In this document: piece after piece, positions 18,801-61,547 of the stretch
Layout of the letters: every line of letters begins with the position of its first letter
Position numbering within the stretch: the stretch's first letter is position 1
Source of the DNA: Octopus sinensis
Taxonomy: Eukaryota
Length of the DNA stretch: 64,000 bases
Direction of reading: 5' to 3'
NCBI RefSeq assembly: GCF_006345805.1
Contig: NC_042999.1
Span: 139,810,001 to 139,874,000 of the forward strand
The notes under the pieces: model-generated
Told to the model about the DNA's origin: nothing
What the model saw: only the letters and a program-made list of their open reading frames with translations
The model's database searches: none
Made by a program: the position numbers and the translations under genes

Positions 18801-19760
18801 TCATACCGATGTTTCTTTAAAGTGTCTTTTCTGCATGACCCTTTTTAAATTCCTTCGCGGTAAGGTAGCCACAGCACCTGTTGATTCTCTGTGTCCTTTG
18901 TGCGGGGAATGTGGTAGCTTTTTTAGTTCTCTCCCCAGAAGAGAGACACTGCTGTGACGTCTGTAATTGCTATCATTTGCTTCTTGCTCCAACAGATGTA
19001 TGCTGTTTCGCCGCTTGTCCACCCATTCATCTATTTCCTTTTCTAAGTGCGACGTCCTTTTACGATGAAGGGACACCCACTTTTCTAAATCCGTTTCCCT
19101 ATTTAAAGCACTCTGCTGACATTGACCAACCCATTTCTCTAAATCCCTCTCCAAGCTAGCAGCATTCTCTCGCTGCTGGATCTCCCATTTTTCAAGGTCT
19201 CTATCCAAACTCACTGAAATATCATGATAGGGTACTGGCCATTTATGAAGAATTCGTTCTTTGTTCAGTATAGCAGTGGGACGCTTACACATCAATTTTT
19301 TAATATTTTTATCCAGACTAGATACTTCTGTGTTCAGACCTTTCCATTTATCTACACCTGAATAGAAAGATTGATTAATTTTCGCCCATTTTTCGAGATC
19401 ACGGTCCAAGCTGGAAGCTACATCATGTAATTGACTAGTTGTCCACCTGTTGAGTGGTTTATGATGAGATGGAGTGCTATGTTGGCTAGCCCACCTTTCT
19501 AGCTCTGCTAGGTGTGAGGCACTCCCATGATGTCCACTGCTCAGCCGTTCCATATCACCCTCAAGCAGGGACTCACTGGTCTCCTGTTGTAACGACCAGT
19601 TTGGGGTTTCCTCTCCAAAAGCAGAAACGGCATCTTGTTGCTGTTCCTCCCACAATGCCAAATCTCCCAGGGCAGACGCCGTACCTTGCAGGTCATCTTT
19701 CTCCTCCTCTTCCAGAGAAGAGTGGCTACGCGGCTGCTCTTGATCCAGTTTCGGACGGCT
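18801..19760 (-). CDS. Terminal coding exon, 319 aa + stop, unknown protein with tandem 18-aa Trp-anchored repeats (SLDRDLEKW)
   Basis: The frame stays open 33 codons upstream of the tracked TTG start (SRPKLDQEQPRSHSSLEEEEKDDLQGTASALGD-LALWEEQ...). It begins exactly after an in-frame TAG that is a splice acceptor (gtgactgtaactttag|AGC), phase 0. 960 nt stop-free in about 35% GC DNA. Confidence 0.85.
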   Translation of the reverse strand, partial: SRPKLDQEQPRSHSSLEEEEKDDLQGTASALGDLALWEEQQQDAVSAFGEETPNWSLQQETSESLLEGDMERLSSGHHGSASHLAELERWASQHSTPSHHKPLNRWTTSQLHDVASSLDRDLEKWAKINQSFYSGVDKWKGLNTEVSSLDKNIKKLMCKRPTAILNKERILHKWPVPYHDISVSLDRDLEKWEIQQRENAASLERDLEKWVGQCQQSALNRETDLEKWVSLHRKRTSHLEKEIDEWVDKRRNSIHLLEQEANDSNYRRHSSVSLLGRELKKLPHSPHKGHRESTGAVATLPRRNLKRVMQKRHFKETSV

Positions 19761-22700
19761 CTAAAGTTACAGTCACACAAGTAACATAAAAGGATACATT
19801 TCCCACAAAAAGCTTATGACAGCTGATCTAACGACAATAACGCATCAGTCACTGTTTTGCTTTAAAGTATAGGGTAGTACGCTTCACTTGAAATATAGTC
19901 AAACCTACAGGCACTTATTTCTCTCCGTCTCTTTATCATAAACCCAAATTACAATATTTTAAAATTGTAAACAGAAGTTACATTTATTAAAAAAAAAGTA
20001 AATGAAACAAAATACTTTGAAATTTCGAGATTTAGATAGAATTTCAGTGAACAAAAACTAAAAGTTCAAGATGAATGTATATAAGCAATGTTCGAAATTA
20101 GACCTCGATTTATTTCTAGTCATTCATTTCAACAAATGACAGCGCATTCCTTTTATCTTTGACTTTTTCAAAATATATCGATTCAACTTCTTATCGATAA
20201 TAAAATGATTTTAAATGCATTATATGTATATATATATCAATGAGCCGTAATATTAATACATAATGCTAGAAACAATTATTAAAGTGTGGTATTAGAAATA
20301 AACGCAAGCAAAAACATTCCGCTCGGGGATTAAAATCGATCTCCGGTTTCAGTGAAAGTAATTTTCTTTTGTTCCAATAAAATTGCACAGAAGGAAATGT
20401 CGCCATCAATTTGGTCAGTAATTCCTGGAAAGCATCCTTTCAATCACTTTCAACAGAACATTGAATATTTTCGTCATATGAAAAAAGAGAAATGTGTTAT
20501 GTCGATGTAAAAATCCAAATACATGTGCACAATATATTGTTTGTTTTCAGCTATTTTCTAGAAGAAAAAGAATGTGGGAAGAATACAAGAAAAGAGAGGA
20601 TTCTATTAACTTCATCGTCCAAAGTGGCTTTGACTAAAATTTTAAAAAATAATCTGCTACAAACCACATGATATAGATTTGCAGGGAGAAAGTACTTCAG
20701 TAGGGTTTCCGGAATTTTCCAATGATCAGTGGGATAGCAGCATCACAGAACTGATTCCTTTTCTTTTTAAATAAGCGGATTCTGTTGAATGTTTCCAAAA
20801 AGACAGCGAATAACAGTAAATTCCATTACAAACAGGGAAAGAAGAGATGAATGAGGGAGAAAAAATGCACCTGTAGTCAGCAGTGTGATTTTATTCCAAT
20901 AACGGTATTGAAAGTAAGAACAACTCTATTTCCAAATACATTCCATTCCTTAGAGCATGTTTTACTAATATTTCATTTACGAAAATTTGGTCCTTGTTCA
21001 AGTACCTTTATAATCGTTTTTCTCATTCTTATATAGAAGCAGTGAGATATATAAACACATATATGGAGCTACATCTTTACAAGCAAATACATTTTAGCTC
21101 ATAACACATCTATATTAAAAAGGAGAGTGATACACGATAGAGAAAGATTAGCTTATGGCGAAAATAAGCTTATTGTTTCAAGCAGGTGCTAGCACGGTTC
21201 ACTGTATTCCATTAATTGTTTGAAACTGTTATTGTTGTCCGAACAGTTATTCCAACTGCCGAAGGTAGGAACGACAGTCTGCTTTTATGATAGTTGTTAG
21301 GAGTAGTGAGCATGCGGTAAATGGCACAGACATCTCCCGCCATACTGCCTGCTGAGAGAGTGAGTGACAGCGAGCGAAGATAGAGAATGAATGAATGAGA
21401 AGGAACTAGTCAGAGAATGAATGAGAGAGAGAGCGATGTACAGAGAAAGAGAGAGAGAGTGTGAAGCTGAGAAAACGCCAGTCGTCCGTGGAAAAACATA
21501 CGAGGTAGAAAGAAATCTATTTGTTGACTGACGAATTTAATGAGAAAATTAATTCAGGATTTTTATTATAAAAAATAAAGTAATGTCGGTGAGTTAGTGT
21601 TTTCTCCTCAGTCAAAAAGACACAGAGTATCAAGAGTGTTAATGTGCAATTGAGAAATAAATTAGAAAAAACAGTGTAAGAGCTACAGCTACGGTAATAT
21701 AATGTAATTTATAACAATCTTGGAAGTTATGAAAAGCAAACTGGAAACTATGGAAAGGAAAAAAAAATTATAGATGAGAAGTGAAGATATTTTAAAAGAT
21801 AGTAGCAAGTGTAATGTTAAGGTTGGATGAGAAAGTGGCCGAAACCCAATTTGTATCGATAACACGAATTATATTTTGTCGATCGGAAGGAGAAAAATGA
21901 ATCTTAGAACAAGCGTAGTTAACGACACTTAATTAGTTAGCAGTAGATCATACAGGGGTATTGGGACGATAACACGCCAATGAGGTGTGCAGGAATCATT
22001 AGGTGCCAACAACTGTGCATACATTATTCCTACACCTTGTCATAAACGGTTGACTGGGGGAACATTCATCAATGTTGGAATTCAATCGTACTGGGTTAAT
22101 GGGGAGGCGCTTACTATTTGCTTGATGCATTACATGTGCAAATCACTGATTAGGTCACGAGTTCGCTCCCTCGTTTCTCATTAAATTCAATTATTTACTT
22201 CACAAGTAGACCAGGTAAGAAAAAGAATATGAACGACGGGGTGCTAGTGCGAACATTGAATCAATGAAAAATAAACTGAAGGTGGTATATATAGGATGAA
22301 ACTCTTTAGATTATCAGTTAACCTCTAGAAAGAGTTTAACAAAATGAAAAATCTGTTCTATTCTCGGTATTGACGAATGAGTGACGACAATGATATATAA
22401 ATAAAATATTTAGTCTGCTGCAACTATATAACTAAGTAAATGGATCTCCATTGTTTTCAACAATTTCTGTGGTTCGATCAACTGAACTACCTATTCATTG
22501 AATAGCGTGTAAGCTACAGAGAAATCCACAGACACGTGTATCTCTGACGTAGTTATCAAGAAGAATCAGCGCAACAGTGTGATAAAGATAGCTCTTGAAA
22601 TAATAGAGTGCATCAGACCGGCTTCAATACAGTTTCCGTCTACCCAATTTCACTTACAATGATTGGGTCAGCTCGAAACATTTGCTAAAGATGTCAGGAA

Positions 22701-25119
22701 GTGAGATTGAATTTGGGACCTTACGACTGCCCTGCATAACAACTAAGCTATGCCTGCGTCCATACATTAATAGATTTTCAGTGATGACGGATAAATAGAA
22801 AACTACTTAGTGATTTATAATTGTTCACCCCTCCTCCTTAGCCATTATAATACTCTTTTTACATAAGATATACTTCAAAATATGGTATTTTGCCCCAAAC
22901 CAATCCAAGTATCTAGACAAGAAATAAATGCTCAACATTTAATTTTTTCTTTACTTGCCAGTAAGACAAATTGATTATAATTGAACAAATGTAACCTGAA
23001 TATTTCTTGACTTTGGAATTTTTATCCTGTAGCATCTGACCTCCAGTTCCAATATAATCTGTATTGTATAGCTTCATATTTCATAGGAAGTAGAATGTTA
23101 TAACTTGTGTTGTTTATACTTCCTTTAAAACAATTTAGTAATGCAAAGTGCTTGCAACTGGAAGACAAGGCAGGTTGCAAACTTAAATTTACAAAGTTGT
23201 TATCACTGCAGCACTAATAACAGAGCCCATGAATAAATAGATTACAGGTGCAGGTATAGCTTTGCAATTAAGAAGTCTGCTTTGCATGGCACCTTGGGTA
23301 TTTTGTACCCTAACTTAGGGTTGACCAATATCCTGTGAGTAGAAGTTGGTTGAGTGAAACTATACAGAAGCTGCCATGATTATGTAGATATCTTTTGCCA
23401 TATGTCAGCATAGGGTGTAAACACGGGTGAAAATCCAGTGCTCTTCAAACAAAGTCCCCTAAATTACATATGATCCCATGTCATTCTTGTTAATTAGAAA
23501 TGCAGTGAACCACTCAATGATTAAATTGTTGAAAATTTTGTTAAACAATGACATCATTGTTCCATAAATTGAAAACAAAAGTATCTATAATTATAAAATA
23601 TAATGCAGTAAACAAATGTAGAATGTTTTTATCCCCAATATAAATTTCTGAACAAGAATAAACATAAATAATGGATTTTTCTATGAAGAGATCAAAAGTT
23701 CAAGGCTTTGTGATAAATACAAGAACCATAAATGGTTTGCTTTTCACAGCACATTCCATTTCCCTTTAATGCATCACAACTATCTACTTACACACCAACA
23801 GAGAATTCCTATAACAGGTATAACTTTAAGAGGAATGAATTTTGCTCTCAGGTAAGTTATATGAAGATAAACTTTCCAGTGTCATTCCCATTACTGGAAG
23901 GATTAGGGTATCCAACATATGTATGCGTGCATAGTGAATATTTTAACAAACTTCATTAACTTAGAAAAATAAATAAAAAGGAATAAAAAAATAGACAATA
24001 AACCTCCTCATAACCAGCAGCAAAAGCAATCGAACTGAGTAGTAAAATAATATGTGATAGAAACATCATTACTCATTCTTATAATTCATGAAGTGGAATC
24101 ACAATTGTAAAAAATAATGTTCTCAGGGTCAAAGTATGACCTTGATAGAAAAATTCCAGATTGACATTATATATTAGGTTATGCACCTTTTCAATTACAA
24201 TGAGACTGTATTTTTGTATGTACATGTGTCACATGGAATATATTTCAATTGAATTACTACTGGAACATGACAATATTGGAACCACTCAGTAATTAAATGC
24301 CATAAATATCTAAGAATTAAATTTTATACATTCCTCTATTTCTGAAATAAAATCTCACTAGAATCAACTTTACTCTTCATCTTTATTGTCTCAATCAAAT
24401 AATATTGATTCAATTAACTATCCTGCCCAAATCTATGACTCTGTTTCAATTAGAAAAAGTATATATGAAACAATATACCATATTACATTGTACAATGGAA
24501 ACAATAAATTCCATGTTATCAATGATAAATGAAGCCTAGAAATAGTTTGAGATCTATTTCATAGCCTGACAAGTGCCCATAAATGTTACAAAATTATCTA
24601 AGTTGTTGGGCCTGAAAATTATCTTTAACTTTACAATCAAAATATAGTGTTTGCTGTAACACTAGCCACTATCAAAATAATGAACCATGTTGGTTAAAGT
24701 ATTCATCTTGGGAGAGTTGCTTACTTTAATATAATACTTCTAATATACTATTTTGTCATACATTTAAGGAAAGAAGAATTATTAAAATAGTCTCAGCATT
24801 TGGTCCTTATATGTAGCAAGGCTACTGTGTATACATTTCCACTCTAAGTTTGACACCAATTCTACAATCCAGTAAATAAAGTTAAATACAATAATTTTAA
24901 AAGTTAACATCTGTAAAATCTTAGGTTCATAGCTGTCTGTTACATATTGTCAGATTAAGAGGTAAAAAACTCTCTCTGTACATATTCAATTGTGAAATGG
25001 TTAGCAAATTCACTTCATATAATAATTCACATTAGAAAATATATCTAATGTTAGCTCCAAGAACTAGGAATTAGTTGATCATAACTCAGTGTTAGAGTTT
25101 TAACAATACAAAGAGTTAA

Positions 25120-25348
25120 TTAACCTTTTCATTACCAACCCAGCTGAAACCGACTCTGGCTCTGAGTACAAATATTTTGTTTTCATAAGTTTTAAATTAA
25201 AATCTTTCACCAAACCTTAGTCACAATTTATGTTCCTAACACTAGCTTAATGATAACTAAGTTATTTTAATAAACTCTTTGTTATATTTAAAATTAATTG
25301 AAAGAACCACAGAGTATCTCAAAATAAATACAGTAACAAAAGGATTAA
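25120..25348. mobile_element. TTAA-flanked MITE
   Basis: TTAA ends, imperfect TIRs, related to 17055-17278. Confidence 0.6.
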
Positions 25349-27063: not shown

Positions 27064-27113
27064 TGTTGAGAACCGGTGGGTCTGCTTTGATATTTGAACA
27101 TTCTGGGTATCAC
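27064..27113 (-). CDS. 50-nt internal exon (G-DTQNVQISKQTHRFST), phase 1 to 0
   Basis: Near-consensus sites gtttctttctgtttcag|GTGATACC...TCAACA|gtaagt, open frame. Converts phase-1 upstream exons into the phase 0 needed by the 19760 acceptor. Confidence 0.7.
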
Positions 27114-28209: not shown

Positions 28210-28338
28210 CTAGAAGAAGAAAAGAATTGAAACATTAATTTATAAAAATAAATATTTTATATGACAAAAATTATCATGAAATCCAAAAATGACAAAAATA
28301 TATATTTAAGGTTATAAAATAAATAAAATTCAACTAAC

Positions 28339-31686: not shown

Positions 31687-32128
31687 CTTTTTGGTTCGGC
31701 GTCTGAAAATTGAATCCGTATCTAGCTTGGAAGCGCTCATACCAATTATTACGGAAGCAAAATTCATTGTAACCAAGGCTGTGTGCTACTTCAACAGCTT
31801 TTCGCTTGATTTTGGTGGCATTTAATTGTACTCCTTGACGACGAAGCTGTAAGACCCATTTGTATATGGCCTGTTCGACATCTCTATAAATTGTACTTCT
31901 AATTCGCTTGCGTTGTGACGAGCCATTGTCTGTGAAATCTTCCAAAATACGCGCGCGGTTTTTCATAATAGTTGATAATGTTGTCGCTGGGATACCGAAT
32001 TCGCGGGCGATAATTTTTTTCTTTTTTGTGCCTTCGTCTACGGCACGTATTATAGCCACTTTTGTCTTGAGAAGCAAACCTTTGCGTTTGCAACCATAAG
32101 GCTTCGATTTATTGATACCAGAAGTCAT
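31687..32128 (-). CDS. First coding exon: pipsqueak HTH + CENP-B/Tc5 HTH (Tigger/TIGD-type DNA-binding module), 147 aa, phase-1 donor, no DDE domain
   Basis: KRK.LLLKTKVAIIRAVDEG..KKIIAREFGIPATTLSTIMKNR and YRDVEQAIYKWVLQLRRQGVQLNATKIKRKA...FRNNWYERFQARY. Donor AAAG|gtgagt; the frame stops 3 codons into the intron. Confidence 0.88.
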
Positions 32129-35250: not shown

Positions 35251-37518
35251 TTCAGCAGGAACAAAATGTCACTGGTAAGACTATAACTTTTTGGACATGA
35301 CAAAGAGGTATTCATGAGTATGTTTAAGAATCTTGTTTCCTGACCCTGTGGTTTAAGACTCACTTTCACTGCTCAGCCCATGAGCAAGTATCTTCTACAT
35401 AAATAAATTAGAAAACCTTTCAACTCACCCCACTCCCGTATTATTGCAAAATATTCCCAAATACACGTTTGACGTGAAAAATTAGTATCTTTTATCTCTT
35501 ATGTATACAATGTCATTTGTAAATTTTCTTTTTCATTAAACACAAATTTTACAACTCTTAACTGATCGGATTGTGAAAGTTAGGGTTATGTTCATTGAAG
35601 ATCATATGATCTTCAGTATTTTTACACACACTAACAAAAAATCTGGGTTCATTGATTCTGAGGAACAATACGATAAACATTGGATTTTGTTTCTCTATCA
35701 TAAGCAAGATAAGGACAAATATAAAGGCAAAAGCTATCCAGACCAAATTATTTGACAGGCAATACATCCAAATCATCAATTCTCATCCTTAATAGAACAG
35801 AAAATAATGAACTTATAAAAATTGATAGACACAATGAAATGGAAATCCATACATTTTTTTTTGTATTGATTCAAAATATAAAGGCAAAATTTAAATATGT
35901 AAATAATGAAATACTTATATTTCATTGTATATACAGCATAAAGCAAGAATTGTAAGTTTCCATCATTCCTAAATTAGAAATTATTATTACTAACAAGTTT
36001 TATTTAGATGAAATACGAAACATCAAAGAAACACGTCAAGATAATTTATGAATAGAAGTGAAAGACATCACAAATATCATCACTACTCGATCACCAAAAT
36101 GAAAGCAGCTTTAGGCTATGGTTTAAAATTAAAACGACTACATATTTTATGTGAATACTTTAATCTATAGAAGAACCCACAAACACTAGTCAAGTTAAGT
36201 TTACAGTTGAATTAAATCTCTCACTACATAGAATCATTCGATAATTAACACTCAGATTAGATTGATGATATACGCAATCCAAAGATTCAATGTTACACAT
36301 GTAGAGTGAACAAAACACTAGATTTGATTAGGTCAATAGATTATCCACTCTTTTACATTCTGATAGTCATAAATAACTTATACTTAACCCCTTAATGCTC
36401 AAATTATTTTCTTCATCCCAAATTTTCCTTCTATAACTTTATAAGAACGAAAAAAAAAAACTTGAATGCGTTGCCAATATTCATTGAAATGTGTGGTTTT
36501 TAGAAGACACTTTAGTCTTATGGTTAATGGCAATGCTTCGGTATTCGTATTAAGAGTGACATTTTAAAAAGCAACTGCTTTTAGATATATCTCTAAAATC
36601 GTTGGTAAATTAATAATCAATTCTTGTGAACTCAAAAAAAAAAAAAGACCATGGGCATTAATGAGTTAAGCTTGAGGTTTAAAAGCTGCTAGTCAAATTA
36701 AGATAAAAGAGAATTAACTTAGTTGGAGGTGATCCAACGAAGAAACAAACTTAAGCCATTAGCTTCACTTAGAAACTCAACCACAATTTAATATAACACT
36801 TTTTACCAGTTTCAGAATGACAGTGAGTTAAAAGAAAAATCAATAAATTTCAAACTAAAATTATCATATAATCCACAACCTTTCTTATACTGAGCACATA
36901 CGGTCTCTCCAGATTTAGTAAGCGTGTAAACGTTCACTAGTATATTTGTTCAGTATTGTTTTAACAGTTCTTCTAAAATAAATTGCATCTATCAGTTTAA
37001 CAGCTTGTGTACGAGTAAATTAAGAACATTCATCTTTCCAAATATTGAATAAAAGTATCCCATCCTTTTCTATTTATATATAACAATCGTTTCTTCAAGT
37101 GAAATTTACATACATAGTGATGGTTTGTCACTCTTTTTGATCTTAGAAACATACCATATATTATTGTTTATACAATACCGAAATAGAAAGAACAAGGAAT
37201 TTGAATGCAGAACGTAAATAATATGGTTAGGAACGGAAAGACAACAGTGATTTTTAAGAAACGATGAAGATACAAAACGTGACCATAGACTGATTGTCTA
37301 GATTTACTACGTTATATATCTAGCAGCCAGCCTCTAAATTCTCTACACACTACATGACGTCAAACTCGAAGTCCAACTCAGGTGTGTTCTCATATTGTTT
37401 TTTTTTTTTCTTTCTCTCTCTCCAACGTTGATGTTACTCGACTCTTTCTATGAGTGTATTTCTCTTTCATATACTCTACGTCTGCTACCACTACCATCAC
37501 ACTTTTTGTTTATCTCAC

Positions 37519-37948
37519 GCTCTTAGTCAGGCCCATGAAAACTGTTATCTAGCCAGAAAGGGCTCTTATCAATTATTCAAACGCAAAATCCACTACAATC
37601 AAGACTGCGTTACTTCTACAGTTTAATTTTTGATTTCAGTAGAATTTAGTTGTACTCCCTGACGACGAAGCTGTAGGACCCATTTCTAAATGGTCTTTCC
37701 GACATCTTTATAAATTGCACCTCTAACCGTCCAACCCATGCCAGCAAGAAAGGACGACGTTAAACGATGATGATGATCTCGCTAGTATTGCTATGAGGCA
37801 TAGTCAGACAAAGTACGAGCGCAATTTTTCATAATGGCTTATGTCATTGCTGGCATACCAAAATATTTGTTTCTTTTTTTTTTTTTTTGGTACCTTCATC
37901 TGCAGCACGTATAACAACCATATAAGATTTCGATTTACTAGATGACAT
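37519..37948 (-). pseudogene. Decayed paralog of the psq/CENP-B HTH exon
   Basis: MSSSKSKSY..VIRAADEGTKK...KWVLQLRRQGVQLNSTEIK still readable, but with a deletion, frameshifts, stops and a SINE insertion. Confidence 0.85.
37726..37776 (+). mobile_element. 5'-truncated RTE-tail insertion inside the pseudo-exon
   Basis: accgtccaacccatgccagcaagaaaggacgacgttaaacgatgatgatga interrupts the alignment with 31900-31915. Confidence 0.85.
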
Positions 37949-40246: not shown

Positions 40247-40279
<33 letters not shown>

Positions 40280-40479
40280 CATCATCATCGTTTAACGTCC
40301 GTTCTCCATGCTAGCATGGGTTGGACGGTTCGACCGGGGATCTGGGAAGCCAGAAAGCTGCACCATATATGTATTTAAATTAATTGTCTCATGACTGGTA
40401 CAGCCAATTATTGTAGGTGTTCATTCTAGATATTCTGGCTGTTGTCTCTATTCATATGTGGAAGGGCTGCAGAACAGAA

Positions 40480-42050: not shown

Positions 42051-42640
42051 AAATGAAGTGAAGAGAAGCATTTAGAAATGACCATGAGGGCTCTAGTTGC
42101 ATACTGCTCATGTTCAAGGAGGTGACATACAATGACATTTTCTTGATATGAGCAGTGCTTGTGAGTTGCTTCTTTTTTACTGTTGAAAGACACAATTTGC
42201 CATGTTCCCATTGAAAAATGCTTTTGAGGTCTCCTATGTTCATAAAGTTAGTGTATATTTTGATGCAACTGTCTAGATTTCATGTGAATGACACTTTGTT
42301 AGGTAAAATTAGGGGAGATGAAAGGTGGTATGCTACAGCGAAGTGGCAGAAGATAAAGGCATGCAAGGCGGACAGAAAAAAGCACTTCAAAGAGATACTC
42401 AAAGCCTCATTGAAAAGCTGTGAGATCAACCCTGACACCTGGGAAATGCAAGTACAAGACCACCCTCCCTGGCAAAGCGGCATCAGCAGAGGTGCCACTT
42501 CCTATGAAGAGAACAGGATTGCAGGGGAACAAAGAAATCTTGAACTGCACAAGTCAGAGTCAACTCTTTGCCTTCAGTCCAAGCAGACCACTACAGTCTT
42601 TTGAGCACGCATTGGACTGAACAGCTGGACACATTATGAC
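42050..42640 (+). mobile_element. RTE (BovB-like) LINE 3' remnant
   Basis: KKHFKEILKASLKSCEINPDTWEMQVQDHPPWQSGISRGATSYEENRIA, followed by ARIGL. Confidence 0.8.
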
Positions 42641-43489: not shown

Positions 43490-43849
43490 CTTGAGCTTTT
43501 CTAACTCGCTTGTCACTAATGCCATGAACAAATCGGAAAGCCTTTGAACAAACTCTAATAAACCTCCCATCAATATTTAAAAAATATTCCCATGTACAAG
43601 TTCGACGTGAAAAGTTAGGATCTTTTCTCTTATGCAAACACTGTCCTTTGCAAGCTTTCTTCTTCATTAAATTAGACAAATATAAATTTTGCAAGTTCCA
43701 ACTAGCCAAGTTATGAAAGTTAGTAAATAATGTGTACTTCACATGATCTTCAATATCTTTATAAGAACAAAATATTTGAGGGCACTGACACTGGGTTACA
43801 ATATCATAAACAGTGGTTTGTGTTCCAATATGTTTTTCCATCATCAATT
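43490..43849 (-). CDS. 360-nt exon encoding a Cys/His transposase-like N-terminal module; phase-1 donor; in-frame ATG at 43844
   Basis: QCQCPQIFC...LFTNFHNLASWNLQNLYLSNLM...SRRTCTWEYFL..IRVCSKAFRFVHGISDKRVRKAQ, intact. Donor CAAG|gtaaga. The first AG after a pyrimidine tract is at 43850-43851, giving a symmetric 1-1 exon. Confidence 0.75.
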
Positions 43850-44376
43850 CTTTTGTTTTTGTACAGCACAATTGAGAGGTAGAACAAAGGCAATTAAATT
43901 TTCTTTTAAATTATAAGAAAAAGAAATGCATGCTATTCAGTAGTCCATTTTGTCTATCATGACAAACCATGTGATATTTTAAAGGATTCTGATTGGCTAT
44001 ATTTGTCATATGCCTTAAAAAGTAACATGAAAAAGTGGTAAGTAAAAGGGAGATAACTAATAAGGACGACATAAGCCATACAAAGGAAAAAATTGATTTC
44101 TTGCACAAAGAAAAAAAAAACGCAATCAATTCCCTCATTTATAGAGTACAAAATAATGTATTGAAAATATATTATAGGGTAGAAAATAATAGAAAACTGG
44201 TAGAAGGAAGCAAAATGCAAAAGATCAAATCCCAAATCTTTTTCACCACATATATATATATATTTTTTTATTATTAATACTTGGCAGAGGTTACAGTGAC
44301 TCAAAGCTGCAAGCTTTGCGCATCAGCCCTTGAGATACTCTAACTTTTGCTGATAATTAAGACACACACACACACA

Positions 44377-48159: not shown

Positions 48160-48770
48160 CAATGAGAATTCTAACAAGTCAATGAGAGCCATTGCCATGT
48201 GTCAAAATCAACAATTAGCTGTGCATGACGATATCAAGTACAAAATCTGTAATGAGAAGAGAACAGTTCATGCCCAAAAAGTGAACAGGAGGAATCACAA
48301 ATGGCTCTGTGATAGATCTATTGAAATCCCCATCTTGGAAGTTATGAGCATGTCATGCCTCCTCACATATCCCCACAAGTCTTAAGGTCAATAGAGGTAG
48401 CCTCATCAAGACAATGGAAACAGTTGTCAAGTCCAAGATTGAGAGGGTAGTTTGGAAGAGGCAGTACATATACCACCAAGACTGATTCTCCTTACACAAC
48501 CAGCATGAACCAGGAGTGGATGGCCAAAAATTTTCATAATCAAGTTATCTCTAACATTTGGTGTCCGAGCTCTCCTGATTTAAAACCCCTGGATTACAAC
48601 ATCTGGAGTGTCAATGAGCAGGAGACCAACAAGCATGCCCTTAATACTAAGGACTTGTGGAGGTTTGCTGTTAGGGACATAATGGCCAACATGAATAAGG
48701 ATCACCTGTTCAACACAGTCATTTCAGAAGCAGTATTGAGGCACTAATCAAGGTTGGTGGCAGTTTTATC
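48160..48770 (+). mobile_element. Tc1/mariner transposase remnant
   Basis: NKSMRAIA.., VMPPHI.., ..TVVK..IERV.., WCPSSPDLKPLDYNIWSV (WPP.SPDLNP.DY motif). Frameshifted. Confidence 0.8.
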
Positions 48771-49449: not shown

Positions 49450-50010
49450 TACTTGGTGACTCTGTTTGTATTGGTACCACATAAAATGCACCCAGTACAC
49501 CCTGTAATGTGGTTGGTGTTAGGAAAGGCATCCATCTATAGAAACCATGCCAAAACAAAGGGGACTGGTATGGCTGAGCCTTGCCAGCTCCTGTCAAACA
49601 ATCTAACCAATGCCAGCATGGAAAATGGATGTTAACTGATGATGATACATATTTTATACATATATACACACAGTTTTATATATCATCATCGTTTAGCGTC
49701 CGCTTTCCATGCTAGCGTGGGTTGGACGGTTCAACTGGGGTCTGGGAAGCCAGAAGGCTGCACCAGGCCCAGTTTGATCTGGCAATGTTTCTACAGCTGG
49801 ATGCCCTCCCTAATGCCAACCACTCCATAAGTGTAGTGGGTGCTTTTTACGTGCCATACGAGTCTGGCAAATGGCCACGATCGGATGGTGCTTTTTATGT
49901 GCCACCAGTACGGGGGCCAGGCGAGGCTGGCAACGACCACGAACGGATGGTGCTTTTTTTTATATATATATCATCATCATCGTTTAATGCCCGTTTTCCA
50001 TGCTAGCATG
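49450..50010. mobile_element. Cluster of three RTE-tail SINE copies in opposite orientations
   Basis: ...ccaatgccagcatggaaaatggatgttaactgatgatga (49645); catcatcatcgtttagcgtccg (49682); catcatcatcgtttaatgcccg (49971). Confidence 0.75.
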
Positions 50011-50011: not shown

Positions 50012-50049
<38 letters not shown>

Positions 50050-50099
50050 GACAGACACACACACATACACATCATGGGCTTTCCTGTCATAGGTAACAG

Positions 50100-51978: not shown

Positions 51979-52250
51979 AAGAGTTTCTCTCATACGAATT
52001 AGTTGCAAGCAGCAATGGATTTTCAGGTTTAATATCATGACTTTGAGGTGCTTTGGGTACATTGTTGAATATTGTAGGAACAGCATATCTCTGAAGTAAA
52101 GCCCGCCCCCCTGGCTTGATCATTTGGAAGCAAGATTTTTCAAAATGTTGACTGCATATGTAGGTGTAATGGCTAGGAGTCCAGTTCTGACGGGCAAGAG
52201 CACGGACCCATTTTTTCCACAGACCTGGCTTTTTACGCACATCAGGAAAT
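51979..52250 (-). CDS. THAP-A exon 2 (FPDVRKKPGLWKKWVRAL...YICSQHFEKSCF...YAVPTIF...), phase 2 to 1
   Basis: Acceptor cctttccttttcatttag at 52251-52252, donor CTT|gtgagt. THAP motifs FP, W, C..HF and AVPTIF. Confidence 0.9.
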
Positions 52251-54430: not shown

Positions 54431-56854
54431 TTTGCTGTCAAGAGGTGAAAGAACTTCTGGATACACCATATCAAACCATACTATTACTTTTGTGTTGCCT
54501 CAGCTACCTATTAGACACATAGTGCTGTAGGGTTAATCAAACAGAGTGACTTATCAAGTCCAGCACAAAACATTCCAGTATTCAACCAGGTTGTCTGCTT
54601 TAATATCACACACAGTATGCTATTTCGCAGATGGTTTATATTTATGGTGCAGTAATCTAAAGTAGGTACATTTTGTTGGCATTCTGTCCTGCCTGTATCC
54701 ATGTATCTAGAGGGTTAAACAGAATTTGAATAGTTTATAGTTTCATTTTAAGAAGTTTCTAACCACTGTTTTTGGATGTACAATCATATGCACATTGCTC
54801 TGATATGTTAATACAGATATAGACATGAGAAGTGGTCCACATAAAATATGACTCATAAGGATGGCTGCACTACTACAAAATTTCGAATTAATCTTTCATT
54901 AGATGTACCATTCAGAAAGTCTTCTTGGCTGCAAGTTACACATGACTGTGCTAATACATTCAGTCTGTAAGCTGAATCACTATAGTACATTTTGTCTAAC
55001 TGACAACACCCATCTCTCTTTATGGTTGAATGATTAGCGAAATATTCCATCCATGCTAGTTTAGTAATGTAAAATGAATAACAAGGACTGATAAACAGAG
55101 TTTAAGAAGTGGATTTTATAGTATCAAGAAAATAAAAGATATATCTTTTCTTGGAGAATGTCAAACTTAGATAGCATTCATAGATGATCTGCTACCTATA
55201 CTAAAGTGTGTAGAATTAAGTGAACACAATAAAATGCCTGCAGTTGATTTAAACTCAAGATACATGCAGTCATATGCCAACATCATATGCACTCACCCAT
55301 TTTACTACTATAAAGGAGAAAGATTTTGCTTAAATTCAATGCTCTATTAGAGACCTCTTTCTAAATCATAAATACCTGTGGAACTTATCTCCAGTTTCCA
55401 CAGGTTTGATCTATATTCTTGGTTACAATGCTTACAAACTAGTTTTTCCTAGAAGAGAATTAAACTATATCACAAGCCAATGAATCAGTCATCTGTTTCA
55501 AAGAATTGTTGTCTACAGTTGTGAATATACCAAATGATATCGGGTGCCCACTGAGAGCTAGGAACATAAGAACAAGTGAGAAAGGAAAACTGGACATGGC
55601 CAGTCAACATGCTACTAATAGCAGTCAGATCGTCTTCAAAGTATATTCAACTGTTTTAGAAAAATACACAATATTTAAGAGGAAGATGAATAGTTAGTCA
55701 TGCCTAAAATTATCTTTGATCTGCTCAGTCAGGACTGATCTGTAGCCAAACAACGATTCAGTGGACCTAGCCGCTGAAAACCAAGTACCTTGACCATGAA
55801 TGGTTTACATAGTGCTGGCTGTCTGGTATCATGTTGTGAGAGATATCCAGTGAACACTCATTATTTTGTTGCAAAGACAATAATTCTCAGGCAAACAAAG
55901 TGTATACAGTCGTCCCCTTAAAATGATGCACAAATATAGTATTCACTAGAGGGATACAGATAAGTAAACAATCTCTTAGCTTTAACTATCATTGATCAAT
56001 GTTCAGAAAGGCAACATAAAATAATCATATATACGATCCATCGCCTACCAAGTACATACACCAACAATACAGATATATTCTATAACTCAGTACTGAACAT
56101 TTTCACATTCTATTTATCACACGGTATTGTAAACACACAGGAAAAGAACATGTGCCTGTTAATCAAAGACTACAAAAGTTCAAGCCAGTAGTTCCTTTGC
56201 TAAAATCCACATCGTCAACATTTGACGCTGTCTGTCATCAATTATCACTCAGCGACTTCATTTCTCTAATTTTTCGAAAGAAAAGTGTCACTAACCATCA
56301 TCCTGGCCAAAGACAAAAGAGTTTGTACACACGGAAAGGAGTTATAATGTTAGAATGTTGTATTAGACAATTTCTATTGAATAGCTCAACAGAAGTTCTA
56401 TATTATAGCGAAAATTCTGCAAAAATGTTAATCTCGGTGGCTAAATCTATAAAATCCATGTGATAAAAAGTATAAAAACGTGGAAGGAGAGCTGACCGAA
56501 TATCAAAGGAAAAGAGAATAATAGTGTGTATGTAATGAATGAGAGAGAAAAATAAAAACTCAGAGATAGTTATACTTGTAAAAGAGTAACGGAAACAGAA
56601 TGGCAACAGATCGAGTGGACAGAGTGAGATAAGATCAAAGAGGAGGGGTAAATAGCAGAGCGATCGTATTTGAAAGATATTTAGTCTCCGCTACTTCACT
56701 AACTTAGCTAACTAGAGTCTGATCCCGTGTACTAGGTACTTAGTGACTTCTGGAATTGTCATACGGAAATGAGTTAAATTGAAACAAACATTAATGGGTA
56801 TAAGAAAACGGGAAAAAATCAAACAACAATAACAGCACAGAAAATTTATCTTAC

Positions 56855-56925
56855 CTGTGGAAGGAAATGCCGCTTCCAGTCTTGTGTTTACTGCTACAAC
56901 CAAACACAGCACAGAAGTTCACCAT
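56855..56925 (-). CDS. THAP-A exon 1 (MVNFCAVFGCSSKHKTGSGISFH-R), phase-2 donor
   Basis: ATG, C-x4-C, ISFH(R), donor CAG|gtaaga. Joins 52250 as HR|FP, the classic THAP intron position. Not in the ORF track. Confidence 0.9.
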
Positions 56926-58464
56926 CTTTCTACAGTGTTTTCATTCAAAGCAATATGGCTGCCCACATATACATCCAAGCATGTCGGCCGCTCACTCAGT
57001 TGGTCGGTGGGTTGGTCGGCTTAGTTCACTGCTGCTGCTGATCCTTAGGATTTTATTCTTCCTTTCATTTTTTTTGTTGTTCTTTCATTCCATCATTTCA
57101 TTCTTTATTGGTTGGTTTATCTTCCATTCGTTTGGGTGTGTTCTTCAAATTCCATCGCTATTTAATTCAGATTGGTTTGCTTGCTTTCTTATGAGAAAAT
57201 TCCAAAACGGAAGTGTAATCGATTAATGAATTATCTTGTATTTTAACCACTGGAATCGACAACTATCAATGAACCAGCGTAACATATTTATTGAATGGAC
57301 CTGCTCGAGTTTATAAACTTTATAAATTGCTTCAAAAATTGCTGCAGAAAACATTTTGGTGAGATTCTTTCTCTCTTTTTTTTTTTTTTTAGGGGTTTTC
57401 AGAGAGACTAATAAAAAATGAAAACGTTCACATTATATACAGAAAAAGCAATTCTTGTCAATCATCAGAACCACGAACACCACATTAATTATATGTGTTC
57501 ACATGAGAGCATCAGTTCATTTGCTGGCATAGTTTTTCATTTCTCGCAGTCAAAATACAAGATAACGAAATACACTTCCATTCGATCTTTGACTACGGAT
57601 CGATTTTTTAATTTTTCAGGGTCATTTCCTTTACAACGAAGAAAATTAACTTTTATTAATTATGAATACACCTCATAACAAACACGTGTGGAGCAAAACA
57701 TTAAAAAAATCTAAGCATCGAATAAGATCATACATAGTGATTCCAACGATCTTAAAATGCTGGAAGATAAAATTCAGCAAACATTTTCCAAGCACTGACA
57801 TAAAAACGCAGATAGGTGGGTATTAAGCCAAAAACATCATTACACTTTAAATCAAATAAAAAAAACATTTCTTTCTCTAGAATGTCATATTTTAGAAAAA
57901 AATATCAACAATAAATATATGATATCTATATTTTCAATCTGATTCATGCTATCATCATCCAAAAGCAAACAATGTTCATATCCTCATGTTCTATTGAACA
58001 GAAATGTCTTAAACCTACATAAGTAGAGCTTTATAGAGGTTGTAAAAACAACTAGGATCCTTCGCAATTCTAACAGAACAGTTACGCAACTGCGACGACC
58101 TTTATACACAAGTGGAGGTGAGGTGAGGATGATTTTTATTAATTTCGAACAGATAAAACGAAAGTAAAGCGGTCAAGGATTTGTTGCAATTACGTCGCCA
58201 TCCTGTTTATTCATTTCACAACACAATAACTACCTAAGAACATTACACGATTGTATAAACAAACAGTTGATTTTACATCAACAATAATTGTTGGATTTTA
58301 TTTTGCTTTTCATAAATCAAAATTCATCCAAAAATCCAATACTTAAAAAAAAACAAAAAAAACATCTAGACTGCAACTACTCGTTATTGCCGAATCAATC
58401 GATTATATTCTCAACTTCAGCAATGTTAGAAATTATCATTATTAATTCGGAAGTGTAAACTCAC

Positions 58465-58696
58465 CTGTAAAAAAATGAACACATGGCATATCGATTCTGT
58501 CAGTACTTTTCTTACCGCGATTAGAACATTTTGTCGGTGGCATATTCCGGAGTTCAGCTTCCTTTTTTCTCCAGTCCCGAACAAGTTTTTCATTAACACT
58601 AAATTGTCTCCCGGCTTCAGAATTATTGGTTTTCAGAGCCAGCATCACAACTTGTAGTTTAAATTTTGAAGTATATTTCATTCGTTTAAAACCCAT
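58465..58696 (-). CDS. First coding exon: Brinker-type DNA-binding domain (pogo/POGK-like), two alternative phase-1 donors (58516 and 58465)
   Basis: KRMKYTSKFKLQVV.LA..TNNSEAGRQFSVNEKLVRDWRKKE.EL..MP.TK..NRG. Donors CGCG|gtaaga and ACAG|gtgagt. Confidence 0.85.
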
Positions 58697-58914
58697 TTTT
58701 ATTCAGATTTGTTTCCGTTTTCGAAGTAGCGCAAATATTTCCCTAACCTGAGTTAATTGATTTCAGTTTGTTGAAAGTTCTATTTAGAAAAAAAGCTAAC
58801 GATTTTTCATCCGTGCAAGGAGAAATCACTTCCTCCTTTCACTGCATCTTTCCGAATGATTTCTAACTTAAAAAAAAAACAATAACAAAAAAAAAAACAC
58901 GAAGCTTGTTTTAA

Positions 58915-59014
58915 CCGGAAGTTCGGATTGCGTCTTACATTCCTAAGTCTTTTATAATGTTTGAAAATATCGAAAAGAATGAGAAGATGAATGGTTATTA
59001 TAAAAATGGCTGCG
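58915..59014. promoter_or_regulatory. CpG-retaining promoter region with ETS-type CCGGAAGT (58915-58922) and YY1-like AAAATGGCTGC (59003-59013)
   Basis: Motifs read directly, 220-320 bp upstream of the Brinker-domain ATG. Confidence 0.45.
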
Positions 59015-59216
59015 AAGTTCTCATAAACTATTTATCGATCACTTTCTGTCTATTACAATTGGTGTTTGAGATTAAGAGGAAATGTTTATTCATTGGATGA
59101 ACAATGCCTAATATGAAATGGAAATTTGAATCTTGTAAGTCGATTGTTTAGAAGGGAATTTCGAGTTTTAATCTCTATTTCATGCAATACAATCAATTCT
59201 GAACATTATACATACA

Positions 59217-59250
<34 letters not shown>

Positions 59251-61055
59251 ACAAGAGAGAGAGAGAGAGAGAGAGCGAAATGATCCCTCCCTTCCAATAT
59301 ACTGATAATAAATTTTCCTTTATTTCTACTCGAAGCTTGCAAAGAAATACATTTTCTCATTAAATAGTGTCTGCATTCCTTTTTTATTTGGGTTCCTTAG
59401 CCCGTATTTCCCCCTGTACCAGTTCACTATTCCGATCACATCTCCACCCCTATACACACAATAAGAAAAAAGAAGTCCAATACAATACAATTTATTGCAT
59501 AGGATTGACAACCTTATATTAATTTAACATTAATGTCCTTTAAAAAAAAAATCAACATTAAGGAAAATAAACAGCAAAAAAGGTGTGAATAATGCTGAAG
59601 AATAAAAAAAAATCCACACTGGGAAAGAGAGATAGAAAGAGGGAAAGAGAAAGAGAGAGAGTTGTGAGGTTTTCAGCAAACCCAGGATCCGAACTAGATT
59701 CCCGATGGAAATAGCTGCACAATGTTATTAACACTTGGAAGGGGATAGTCGTAATATCTTTTTCTCATTTCACATAAAACAATTTTTCTAATCTCACCTC
59801 TACAGGACTACATTTCTCTGAAATTCAATTGCATTCTCTTTACCTATTTTATCGAATCTCCATTTAGAAATACTAAAAACTGTTCATTGTTCTCCAATAA
59901 GAAATGTATAATTTGAAAACAGAACCTCCTCAATTAAAAACCAATTAATAAAAGTATCTTCCACCTTATATAGAACATTTAATAACGTGTTAACTCAGCT
60001 CCACATTACTTAGTTTTGTAGGAGCAGGTAAGTGCCTACATCCCATTCTTTTGTTGAGGGTGAGTGTGGATATTGAAATCTTTCTACTTTGCGATATTCT
60101 GTATATTTTATTGTAATGTCTTCGTCAAAGAAGAACTGGGCCCAGAACACTTTTCAGAGCCTCAATAACTGCTTTCAGGAATTTTATCCTCAGATCGGGG
60201 TCCTGGTGAATATTCTCGCAATAGAATGGGCTCCGCTCACTCAAGGTGGGAGTTAAACCGTACAAGAGATTAAGTTTTCCACCCAAGAACAGGAACGGTC
60301 CTTCCAATGAACTTTCACTCAGTTTCTCTCTAACTTCATTCACAACACATTGAAACTGTCAGAAAACCTTTGCCGAAGGTATTGTGTAGAGGAACCTGAA
60401 ACAACGCAGCCACGAAGCGATGCTTCCATTTGCACAGCTATACTCACGCCCACTATATGCTTTGATTGTGCGTCTGCATCGATCAAGAGCTAGACAACTG
60501 TTATTAATCATTCCAGTCCAGTAGATGAGTTAATGATTTTGTTTGGGCGGTATTAAAGAATTAAGTACTCAGAATGAAAGCTGCATCGGAAATGTATGCT
60601 CCTAACGCAAAGTTCCTAAGTCACCCTTTCAGTTCGTTTCTAAGTTTTCTGGGAAAAGACATAACGAATTTCTCCCACCCTCTTTAAGCAAAGTCTATGC
60701 AAAGATGAACAGTTATAAATCCGTATTTTGCGCGAACTAACCTGAAGTTTGTTTATAAATCCATATTATTGGAGAAAAAAGAAAACCGGAGGCAATTGTT
60801 TACTATTAACGGGCTTGTTTACATTTGAACATGCGTTGCCAAAATCATTAAGACGGGATTTTATGATCCAAAGTAGTCACCATTCTACATTTACTTTCAA
60901 GGAAATGTACTTAGGAATACAGTATCCAATGAGTTCTTCCTTTATTTAAGACCGTGCCGTGTTCATTTGAAGGAAATAAGGATATCTTTAGCAGGTTGGG
61001 GCCCTGCATCGGGTTGCGTCATTCCTTGAAGTAAGACATACTGCTATAACTTCTG

Positions 61056-61094
61056 TGACGTCATGATAACTCGAATCTTAATCTGACCAATCAG
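61056..61094. promoter_or_regulatory. CRE palindrome TGACGTCA + CCAAT box
   Basis: tgacgtca at 61056-61063 and gaccaatcag at about 61085-61094. Confidence 0.45.
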
Positions 61095-61306
61095 AATGAG
61101 GTAGAAGGTTCGAAAAATTAAGCATCATTATAGAGATGGTGTTGGCGACACAGTGCTGAGTGAGAGAAGAAAACAGCACGAATTGGATAACTATGAACAA
61201 ACGAAACAAAGCAGAAAGGAAGAAACAATATAGATGGACTACGAATTATGCTCATGAACTGAAGAAAAAAAAAACATAAAGCAGGTTTCATAGATAGTTT
61301 CTTTAC

Positions 61307-61547
61307 CAAGGTAAATCGTTGGGAGATCATAAGGACTTTCCTTACGGTTGTTCCAGAAATGCCTGCTGCACACCCGATGGTCACGACTTATGTGCTTTAC
61401 TTCTTCGTAATTATTTGGGTCATAGCCAGCTCGTCGCATCCACTCATTTCTTAAATGGATATTTTTCCATGGCAGACGGTAGAAGCTAATCGGTCCACCT
61501 TTCTTCTGAAGGGACCGACAGCCTTTCACTATACATTTGGTTGGCAT
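61307..61547 (-). CDS. THAP-B first exon: complete THAP domain in one exon (80 aa), phase-1 donor
   Basis: MPTKCIVKGC...ISFYRLP...RNEW...RVCSRHF...LPTIYL. Donor CTTG|gtaaag; the read-through is low-complexity intron. Confidence 0.88.

What the first reader, a model, noticed from the sequence alone, without database searches (positions are those of the whole stretch)
18801..61547. Candidate protocadherin-like locus: variable transposase-derived DNA-binding first exons, all phase 1, upstream of one constant region
Seen: five intact minus-strand exon units carry unrelated DNA-binding modules (THAP-B, Brinker DBD, THAP-A, Cys/His module, psq+CENP-B HTH), plus one pseudo-unit. Each is cut right after the DBD by a canonical GT donor, and every donor is phase 1 (241, 181/232, 71+272, 355 and 442 nt from ATG; all 3n+1). 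No DDE or other catalytic domain follows any of them. Downstream is a chain of exons with phases 1-1 (9 nt), 1-1 (42 nt), 1-0 (50 nt), then 0 (960-nt terminal exon), so each unit could join it without frameshift or stop. Known: these are the DNA-binding domains of P-element, pogo and Tigger transposases. Clustered protocadherins use variable first exons on constant exons, and Drosophila mod(mdg4)/lola put variable DBDs on a constant BTB. Inference: one gene generating a family of transcription factors with interchangeable, transposon-captured N-terminal DBDs on a shared effector tail, i.e. mod(mdg4) in reverse polarity. Five matching phases would occur about 1% of the time if phases were uniform ((1/3)^4), but phase-1 bias at domain borders weakens this.
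Basis: partly seen in the sequence, partly recalled or inferred. Interest (0 to 1): 0.93.

Follow-up and report, generated by a model that had tools for sequence, protein, structure and literature searches.

The report
Octopus BTB gene with swappable DNA-binding heads
The window holds part of one very large octopus gene in which many alternative first exons, each encoding a different transposon-derived DNA-binding domain, are spliced onto a shared BTB-domain tail.

Summary
The five minus-strand units exist at the stated coordinates, and each ends in a phase-1 GT donor. Four carry significant Pfam DNA-binding domains: THAP, BrkDBD, THAP (split by an intron), and CENP-B_N plus HTH_Tnp_Tc5. The same four occur in RefSeq or ENA protein models of one gene, O. 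bimaculoides LOC106877732, which has at least 36 isoforms. They are isoforms X21, X27, X11 and X10; X10 also has an O. vulgaris counterpart, CAI9720177.1. Each is spliced directly to the 50-nt exon at 27113-27064.

After the 50-nt exon come four more constant exons that encode a BTB/POZ domain. They lie 43-70 kb beyond the low end of the window, in O. sinensis CM016861.1, which abuts the window at 100% identity. The 9-nt and 42-nt exons are no better than chance. The 960-nt ORF is a real, constrained coding exon (omega 0.16), but no protein model contains it. The Cys/His unit is unverified.

THAP-B, Brk and THAP-A exon 1 are conserved as islands, in the same order, in Argonauta. THAP-B and Brk there show strong purifying selection and a conserved donor. 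The architecture sits in RefSeq as "uncharacterized protein", and I found no paper describing it.

The parts
61307..61547 (-). Variable first exon THAP-B (ATG to phase-1 donor, TTG|GTAAAG)
   Evidence: Pfam THAP E 9e-11. 100% identical to the N-terminus of O. bimaculoides isoform X21, XP_014782210.1, which continues ...PTIYL-G-DTQNV. Conserved island with a conserved donor in Argonauta, pN/pS 0.04-0.09.
58516..58696 (-). Variable first exon Brk (BrkDBD/psq-type HTH), donor CGCG|GTAAGA
   Evidence: Pfam BrkDBD E 1.9e-11. My predicted spliced protein (this exon + G + constant region) is exactly RefSeq XP_014782217.1, isoform X27. 61-68% identical to the N-termini of pogo-type transposases that carry DDE_1. 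Conserved in Argonauta, pN/pS 0.25, with a G|GTAAGA donor there too.
56855..56925 (-). THAP-A exon 1 (71 nt of CDS, donor phase 2)
   Evidence: Found by scan. Joins exon 2 to rebuild a complete THAP domain, E 8e-17 in P0050. The exon and about 85 nt upstream are conserved in Argonauta.
51979..52250 (-). THAP-A exon 2 (272 nt, donor phase 1, TCTT|GTGAGT)
   Evidence: Matches O. bimaculoides isoform X11, XP_014782200.1, with 2 aa differences and junction ...ERNS-C-DTQNV. Also matches the Argonauta THAP+BTB protein P0002.
43490..43844 (-). Cys/His unit: candidate variable first exon, unverified
   Evidence: Intact 118-codon ORF with a phase-1 donor CAAG|GTAAGA. No Pfam or PDB match, and the AlphaFold2 model has pLDDT 39.6. 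The predicted isoforms were not found by exact look-up. A decayed paralogue at 35439-35691 suggests this copy is kept by selection.
37602..37862 (-). Pseudo-unit: decayed copy of the CENP-B-type unit 5
   Evidence: tblastn 47% identity to unit 5 aa 44-117, with in-frame stops and an insertion.
35439..35691 (-). Decayed copy of the Cys/His unit
   Evidence: 70% nucleotide identity over 253 nt to 43581-43824, with stops in frame.
31687..32128 (-). Variable first exon unit 5 (CENP-B_N + HTH_Tnp_Tc5), donor AAAG|GTGAGT
   Evidence: Pfam 4.6e-13 and 2.2e-12. 100% identical to the N-terminus of O. vulgaris CAI9720177.1 and 99.3% to O. bimaculoides isoform X10, XP_014782199.1, with junction ...PNQK-G-DTQNV.
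27064..27113 (-). Constant exon C1 (50 nt, phase 1 in, phase 0 out), GDTQNVQISKQTHRFST
   Evidence: Present in all isoforms that use the window's variable exons, and in the Argonauta P0002 model. Strong acceptor TTTCTGTTTCAG|. Its donor joins the HFVGG exon at L004:44150, outside the window.
18801..19760 (-). 960-nt conserved coding exon; membership in this gene not shown
   Evidence: The ORF opens exactly at an AG acceptor. It is 95% identical in another Octopus species against about 89% in the flanks. Omega is 0.16. Its first Met is not conserved, so it needs an upstream coding exon. Absent from every protein model: only a raw ORF call, P0001, matches it.

Best explanation
The window is O. 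sinensis CM016861.1, about 139,810,001-139,874,000. It covers the middle of one gene of more than 130 kb, LOC115209932, the orthologue of O. bimaculoides LOC106877732. The gene is an array of alternative first exons. Each has its own ATG and encodes a complete DNA-binding module, and most of these are of transposase type. Each ends in a donor that splices to the next constant exon downstream, and the other variable exons in between are removed as intron.

The window's units form one tier whose phase-1 donors all join the 50-nt exon C1 at 27113. C1 then joins four further constant exons, C2-C5, outside the window. Those encode a Gln/Arg-rich linker, a BTB/POZ domain and a long Ser/Thr-rich tail. 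Further tiers of variable exons lie upstream of the window and between C1-C2 and C2-C3.

Shown: the exons, donors, acceptor and junction residues; the domain identities; and conservation of exon order, coding sequence and donors in Argonauta.

Inferred: each variable exon has its own promoter. The products are sequence-specific factors that dimerise or recruit partners through the common BTB domain. New heads arose when transposons landed upstream of a constant acceptor and a GGT-AAG or GGT-GAG codon pair inside the transposase ORF served as a phase-1 5' splice site. The Gly codon is rebuilt by the GT that opens C1.
For: - Pfam domains of the units and of the full isoforms.
- RefSeq and ENA isoforms whose N-termini equal the window's exons: X21, X11, X10 and CAI9720177.1.
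- My own predicted Brk isoform is exactly XP_014782217.1.
- At least 36 isoforms share one tail, with three or four junction classes.
- L004 abuts the window at 100% identity. It carries C2-C5 and at least 15 further variable exons in order.
- In Argonauta, THAP-B', Brk', THAP-B, Brk and THAP-A exon 1 lie in the same order, alignable only as exon-sized islands of 79-86% identity in otherwise unalignable DNA. The donors are conserved for THAP-B and Brk, and pN/pS is 0.04-0.25.
- An independent Argonauta model joins THAP-A to C1 to BTB.
- The Brk alignment to pogo transposases runs through ...CSNRGKK, so the donor sits in the ancestral Gly-Lys codons.
- Decapodiform relatives have HTH+BTB ORFs on short contigs that look like cDNA.
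Against: - The XP_ models are computational. I could not inspect RNA-seq, Iso-Seq or CAGE support.
- In O. sinensis itself, the indexed gene range starts downstream of the window, and sinensis-type isoforms carrying the window's heads are not in the collection.
- The O. vulgaris entries carry O. bimaculoides and O. sinensis names, so they may be lifted over rather than independent.
- Separate promoters, DNA binding and BTB function are all untested.
- The Cys/His unit has no support beyond its ORF, its donor and a decayed paralogue.
Confidence: 0.85

Rival explanations
1. The heads are joined through 9-nt, 42-nt and 50-nt exons to the 960-nt exon at 19760-18801 as the common terminal exon, giving DBD proteins with a repeat-rich tail and no BTB. 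A weaker form has 19760 as an alternative terminal exon used alongside the BTB tail.
For: The C1 donor is phase 0, and the 19760 acceptor is phase 0 with a usable pyrimidine tract. The ORF opens exactly at the AG in two species. Its first Met is not conserved, and no conserved ATG...GT phase-0 first exon lies within 1.7 kb upstream, so it must be fed from further upstream. It is under purifying selection, omega 0.16.
Against: No protein in either large collection contains this exon, apart from a raw ORF call on a genomic contig. All isoforms that use the window's heads go from C1 to HFVGG. The 9-nt and 42-nt exons are in no isoform and are at chance level. A different 42-nt exon, LKTQNQINEEYDV, is the real one, and it is not in the window.
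Confidence: 0.12
2. The 960-nt exon belongs to a separate, unannotated, lineage-restricted gene nested in the 70-kb C1-C2 intron. Its promoter or first exon would lie near the almost invariant block at 21190-21350 or further upstream.
For: The exon is single-copy, with no paralogues or TE relatives. It is constrained. A 160-nt block about 1.5 kb upstream is nearly 100% identical between species whose flanks differ by about 11%. The protein ends in ETSV, a class I PDZ-ligand pattern by general knowledge, which is unlike a transcription-factor tail.
Against: No in-frame conserved first coding exon was found in 19761-21450. No gene model exists in any of four annotated octopod genomes.
Confidence: 0.5
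3. The head exons are inert transposon debris or separate small genes, and the multi-isoform models are annotation artefacts that chain chance ORFs to a BTB gene.
For: The introns are full of TE fragments. The Argonauta pipeline produced a clearly chimeric model, P0003. ORFs of 100-140 codons are common in this AT-rich sequence.
Against: The exons alone are conserved between Octopus and Argonauta, with saturated synonymous and few non-synonymous changes and a conserved donor. Every donor matches the phase of its constant acceptor. Two independent RefSeq annotations (O. bimaculoides, O. sinensis) and one Argonauta annotation all give DBD+BTB proteins. The THAP-A domain is rebuilt only by splicing.
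Confidence: 0.04

Closest known systems
Drosophila mod(mdg4) and lola
   Same: A single locus produces 20-30 or more transcription or chromatin factors that share one BTB/POZ domain and differ in an alternatively spliced DNA-binding module. One octopus head is even a FLYWCH finger, the mod(mdg4) module.
   Different: The polarity is reversed: variable N-terminal first exons and a C-terminal shared BTB. The heads belong to many unrelated folds (THAP, psq/Brk, CENP-B/Tc5, FLYWCH, Tc1-like HTH, a zinc-finger-like head, DUF3504/Crypton-like) rather than one. All exons are on one strand, so cis-splicing suffices and trans-splicing need not be invoked. The BTB domain is closest to IVNS1ABP, ZBTB and BCL6 types, so the resemblance is convergent rather than orthologous.
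Clustered protocadherins and UGT1A (variable first exons on constant exons)
   Same: A tandem array of self-contained 5' exons, each spliced to common downstream exons, with the intervening variable exons removed as intron.
   Different: The variable exons are mostly not paralogues of one another. Constant exons are interleaved with tiers of variable exons, giving three or four junction classes. The product is nuclear rather than an adhesion molecule or an enzyme. Per-exon promoters are not shown.
Host-transposase fusion genes (transposase DNA-binding domain captured by a host gene through splicing; Cosby et al. 2021, from my own knowledge)
   Same: Transposase DNA-binding domains without the catalytic domain are fused to a host protein-interaction domain by splicing and kept under purifying selection.
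   Different: Dozens of captures sit in one locus. The transposase part supplies the first exon and the donor, rather than accepting a host 5' exon.
Octopus THAP, CENPB and HTH-Psq 'gene expansions' reported in PMC10027918
   Same: These are the same proteins. That paper notes that Octopus THAP and CENPB proteins are mostly associated with BTB/POZ.
   Different: It counts them as separate genes, treats BTB as transposon-derived, and never uses the word 'isoform'. Here they are alternative products of one locus.

Membership tests
Variable-first-exon array (Pcdh/UGT1A type) | Tandem alternative 5' exons, each encoding a complete N-terminal module with its own ATG | tested here: met
   At least 15 more in L004.
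Variable-first-exon array (Pcdh/UGT1A type) | Each variable exon is spliced to the same constant exons | tested here: met
   Four of the five window units occur in protein models joined to C1, with matching split-codon residues. This rests on predicted models, not on reads.
Variable-first-exon array (Pcdh/UGT1A type) | Each variable exon has its own promoter | not testable with these tools
   No CAGE or RNA data. The only indirect hint is conservation upstream of THAP-A exon 1.
Variable-first-exon array (Pcdh/UGT1A type) | Variable exons are paralogues of one another | tested here: not met
   The heads are unrelated Pfam families. Only local duplicates exist: THAP-B/THAP-B', Brk/Brk', unit 5 and its pseudo-copy.
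mod(mdg4)/lola-type BTB multi-isoform locus | Shared BTB domain with alternative DNA-binding modules from one locus | tested here: met
   BTB E about 1e-10 in every isoform, with different DNA-binding domains.
mod(mdg4)/lola-type BTB multi-isoform locus | BTB in constant 5' exons, variable modules as 3' exons | tested here: not met
   Variable exons are 5' and the BTB lies in exons C4-C5 at the 3' end.
mod(mdg4)/lola-type BTB multi-isoform locus | Arthropod TTK-group BTB sequence type | tested here: inconclusive
   The best PDB matches are IVNS1ABP, ZBTB17/BCL6 and SLX4. A Drosophila CG6765 BTB matches only weakly, E 4e-4.
Host-transposase fusion gene | DNA-binding domain homologous to that of a transposase | tested here: met
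   The Brk exon is 61-68% identical to proteins with BrkDBD+HTH_Tnp_Tc5+DDE_1. Pfam finds THAP, CENP-B_N and HTH_Tnp_Tc5.
Host-transposase fusion gene | Catalytic domain lost and DBD fused to a host domain | tested here: met
   No DDE match downstream of any unit. Fusion to BTB is seen in the models.
Host-transposase fusion gene | Purifying selection on the captured domain | tested here: met
   THAP-B pN/pS 0.04-0.09 and Brk 0.25 against Argonauta. Not testable for unit 5 or the Cys/His unit.
Autonomous DNA transposon copy | Transposase ORF with DDE/RNase H domain | tested here: not met

The most novel reading that the evidence does not exclude
Octopods, and probably coleoids generally, carry a 'DNA-binding-domain capture' locus. 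A BTB gene with very long 5' introns and phase-matched acceptors has repeatedly turned transposon insertions into new transcription-factor isoforms. At least 36 promoter-specific heads from eight or more unrelated fold families now share one dimerising tail. If head choice is cell-type-specific or stochastic in neurons, and isoforms heterodimerise through the BTB domain, this would be a combinatorial regulatory code that parallels clustered protocadherins. It would be a convergent, reversed-polarity counterpart of mod(mdg4)/lola. The 960-nt exon could add BTB-less isoforms that compete for the same sites.
Probability: 0.2. Interest if true: 0.9.

Novelty: new variant of a known kind. Interest (0 to 1): 0.72.

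Why it matters
The locus shows how one gene can assemble a whole family of transcription factors from unrelated transposase DNA-binding domains. It also offers a readable mechanism: a splice donor inside the ancestral Gly-Lys or Gly-Glu codons, with matched phase. It revises published counts of octopus THAP, CENPB and Psq "genes", many of which are isoforms of one locus. It supplies a clear case of convergence with Drosophila mod(mdg4)/lola outside arthropods. Finally, it gives a tractable system for asking whether cephalopod nervous systems use promoter choice to diversify regulators, as they are known to do for protocadherins.

Tried and rejected
- **9-nt and 42-nt micro-exons.** Rejected. 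They are in no isoform. Thirteen equally good candidates lie in the same interval. The real 42-nt exon (LKTQNQINEEYDV) is not in the window.
- **Brk donor 58465.** Rejected in favour of 58516.
- **Homology searches with the 960-nt ORF.** They returned only its own orthologous ORF and a spurious repeat protein.
- **A local first exon for the 960-nt ORF.** None is conserved in 19761-21450.
- **Rfam on the whole window.** Nothing.
- **Cys/His unit.** Pfam, PDB sequence search, single-sequence AlphaFold2 (pLDDT 39.6, so no fold search was run), an exact ORF look-up and predicted-isoform look-ups were all negative or uninformative.
- **Transcript contigs for individual isoforms.** These look-ups failed because only the longest product per gene is indexed.
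- **Six-frame Pfam scan of the whole minus strand.** Prepared but not run. I used tblastn with all known heads instead.
- **Literature.** Searches for the locus name and for BTB with alternative first exons in cephalopods found no description.
Full report
**Observation**

Each putative exon ends at a GT, and the lengths from the ATG are all 3n+1: 241, 181 or 232, 71+272, 355 and 442 nt.

Pfam gives significant matches for four units:
- THAP at 61547-61307.
- BrkDBD at 58696-58516.
- The C-terminal two thirds of a THAP domain at 52250-51979. Its N-terminal third is a 71-nt exon at 56925-56855. The spliced product is a full THAP domain (E 8e-17).
- CENP-B_N plus HTH_Tnp_Tc5 at 32128-31687.

The Cys/His unit at 43844-43490 matches nothing in Pfam or PDB, and a single-sequence AlphaFold2 model was useless at pLDDT 39.6. 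No DDE remnant follows any unit.

**What the units belong to**

I searched with the concatenated heads and found an Argonauta hians protein with THAP and BTB domains (P0002).

I then searched with its non-THAP part. This returned O. bimaculoides LOC106877732 and O. sinensis LOC115209932. Their isoforms share an identical tail of about 580 aa and differ only at the N-terminus. Listing the clusters showed at least 36 isoforms, X1 to X36.

Four of them start with the window's units:

| Window unit | Isoform | Match |
|---|---|---|
| THAP-B | X21, XP_014782210.1 | 100% |
| THAP-A | X11, XP_014782200.1 | 2 aa differences |
| Unit 5 | X10, XP_014782199.1 | 1 aa difference |
| Unit 5 | O. vulgaris CAI9720177.1 | 100% |

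For Brk, I built the protein expected from donor 58516, the split Gly codon and the O. bimaculoides tail. An exact look-up returned XP_014782217.1, isoform X27.

In all four cases the head is joined directly to GDTQNVQISKQTHRFST, the 50-nt exon at 27113-27064. The residue at the split codon is the one predicted from the window's nucleotides: G, G, C, G. The donors and the acceptor are therefore confirmed to the base, at the level of predicted gene models.

**The constant region**

After the 50-nt exon every isoform continues HFVGGNGPTRDHPD..., which is not in the window.

Looking up the O. sinensis X1 protein gave 80 kb of CM016861.1 (L004). Its first 928 bases are 100% identical to window 928-1. 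The window is therefore O. sinensis, about CM016861.1:139,810,001-139,874,000, and L004 continues it downstream.

L004 carries four constant exons, at 44150-44245, about 68199-68435, about 68520-68828 and 69184-70245. Pfam places the BTB domain in the last two.

L004 also carries at least 15 further head exons. They include THAPs, psq, CENP-B type, a Tc1-like HTH, a zinc-finger-like head and three DUF3504/QRICH1-type heads. They sit in two tiers, one joining the HFVGG exon and one joining the AGPSNQ exon.

A further tier uses a different 42-nt exon, LKTQNQINEEYDV. Its heads include FLYWCH, another CENP-B type and other THAPs. That exon is not in the window and must lie upstream of it. The locus spans at least 130 kb.

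The 9-nt and 42-nt exons are in no isoform. Thirteen equally good phase-1/phase-1 AG...GT candidates lie in the same 4.6 kb.

The 960-nt exon is not part of any protein in either large collection. Only a raw ORF call on a genomic contig of another Octopus species matches it.

The exon is nevertheless real:
- It is 95% identical between the two species, against about 89% in the flanks.
- All indels are in frame, and omega is 0.16.
- It opens exactly at an AG in both species.
- Its first Met is Ile in the other species, so it must be fed by an upstream coding exon.

I found no conserved first exon within 1.7 kb. A 160-nt block at 21190-21350 is almost invariant. Whether 19760 is an alternative terminal exon of this locus or part of a nested orphan gene remains open.

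**Independent support from comparison**

In Argonauta (L002), the only DNA that aligns to this part of the window is exon-sized islands, apart from a short interspersed repeat. The islands are two THAP-B copies, Brk and THAP-A exon 1, in the same order and orientation. A second Brk copy (44% aa identity) lies between the THAP-B copies.

THAP-B has saturated synonymous change with pN/pS 0.04-0.09, and the GGTAA donor is conserved at the same position. Brk has pN/pS 0.25 and a G|GTAAGA phase-1 donor in both species.

The Argonauta heads correspond one-to-one to O. bimaculoides isoforms X20, X19, X21, X27 and X11. The array therefore predates the split between Octopus and Argonauta.

Cuttlefish and Logan contigs show related HTH+BTB proteins. 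Some are long ORFs on 1.8-2.5-kb contigs that look like cDNA.

Neighbouring paralogous genes carry THAP, FLYWCH or FAR1/ZSWIM3_N heads on the same kind of tail.

**Mechanism**

The most likely mechanism is alternative first-exon use. Each head has its own ATG and no acceptor. Its donor takes the first constant acceptor downstream, and the other heads are spliced out.

THAP-A exon 2 does have an acceptor, but it is phase 2. Upstream phase-1 heads cannot use it in frame.

The donors look like by-products of the captured ORFs:
- The Brk alignment to pogo-type transposases runs through ...CSNRGKK, so the donor G|GTAAGA lies in the Gly-Lys codons.
- Unit 5 ends ...NQK-GE, with the donor G|GTGAGT in Gly-Glu codons.
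- C1 begins with GT, which rebuilds the Gly codon.

This explains the uniform phase 1 better than chance or a general bias at domain borders.

The following are inferred, not shown: a promoter per exon, DNA binding by the heads, and BTB-mediated dimerisation or partner recruitment.

**The Cys/His unit**

It has an intact 118-codon ORF and a good phase-1 donor ending in G. Its predicted isoforms were not found, either with the O. bimaculoides tail or with the O. sinensis/vulgaris tail.

It has a decayed copy at 35439-35691, and unit 5 has a decayed copy at 37602-37862. On the minus strand the order is Cys/His, pseudo-unit 5, pseudo-Cys/His, unit 5. This looks like an old duplication of a two-head block followed by complementary decay. 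That pattern argues the intact Cys/His copy is maintained by selection, but it does not prove it.

**Novelty**

The isoform set is public in RefSeq under "uncharacterized protein".

One paper (PMC10027918) noted that Octopus THAP and CENPB proteins are associated with BTB/POZ. It counted them as separate genes and never mentions isoforms.

I found no description of the locus or of its architecture.

The BTB domain is of a generic type, so the likeness to mod(mdg4)/lola is convergent. I rate this a new variant of known kinds: variable-first-exon arrays, BTB multi-isoform loci and host-transposase fusions. It is already modelled but apparently undescribed.

Noticed in passing
window 18801-19760 (-): Orphan coding exon with repeated SLDRDLEKW-like motifs and a C-terminal ETSV (class I PDZ-ligand pattern). 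It is under purifying selection between two Octopus species and has no homologue in 1.8 billion representative proteins apart from a spurious repeat match.
   Followed up: partly
window 21190-21350: A block of about 160 nt that is almost 100% identical to another Octopus species whose flanking DNA differs by about 11%. It is preceded by a CT-rich tract, has no Rfam match and no convincing coding exon. It may be a promoter, a 5' exon or an enhancer.
   Followed up: partly
window 37602-37862 and 35439-35691 (-): Decayed copies of unit 5 and of the Cys/His unit, alternating with the intact copies. This suggests an old tandem duplication of a two-head block followed by complementary loss.
   Followed up: partly
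window 1-928 = L004:928-1: The window is O. sinensis CM016861.1, about 139,810,001-139,874,000. In that genome's indexed annotation the BTB gene range starts downstream of the window, so the window's heads appear not to be linked to it there.
   Followed up: partly
window 48505-48747 (+) and 42218-42604 (+): Plus-strand ORFs that look like transposable-element debris inside the introns. By eye, one is a mariner/Tc1-type transposase C-terminal fragment. The other is a LINE-tail-like ORF that resembles a piece of the chimeric Argonauta model P0003.
   Followed up: no
window 40278-40338, 49682-49739, 37722-37777; many sites in L002: A repeat of about 60 nt, 80-89% identical between Octopus and Argonauta and present in many copies in both orientations. 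It is probably a conserved SINE or MITE core.
   Followed up: no
L002:10001-29820 (Argonauta): Gene model P0003 (405 aa) is chimeric. It strings together the Brk' head, a retroelement-like fragment and the Brk head, and it ends through an invented mini-intron instead of the conserved G|GTAAGA donor.
   Followed up: partly
proteins P0019, P0032, P0039 (O. bimaculoides LOC106877737, -745, -743): Paralogous genes on the same chromosome (consecutive LOC numbers suggest they are neighbours) have the same tail type with THAP, FLYWCH or FAR1/ZSWIM3_N heads. The head+BTB design is therefore a family, of which this locus is the extreme case.
   Followed up: partly
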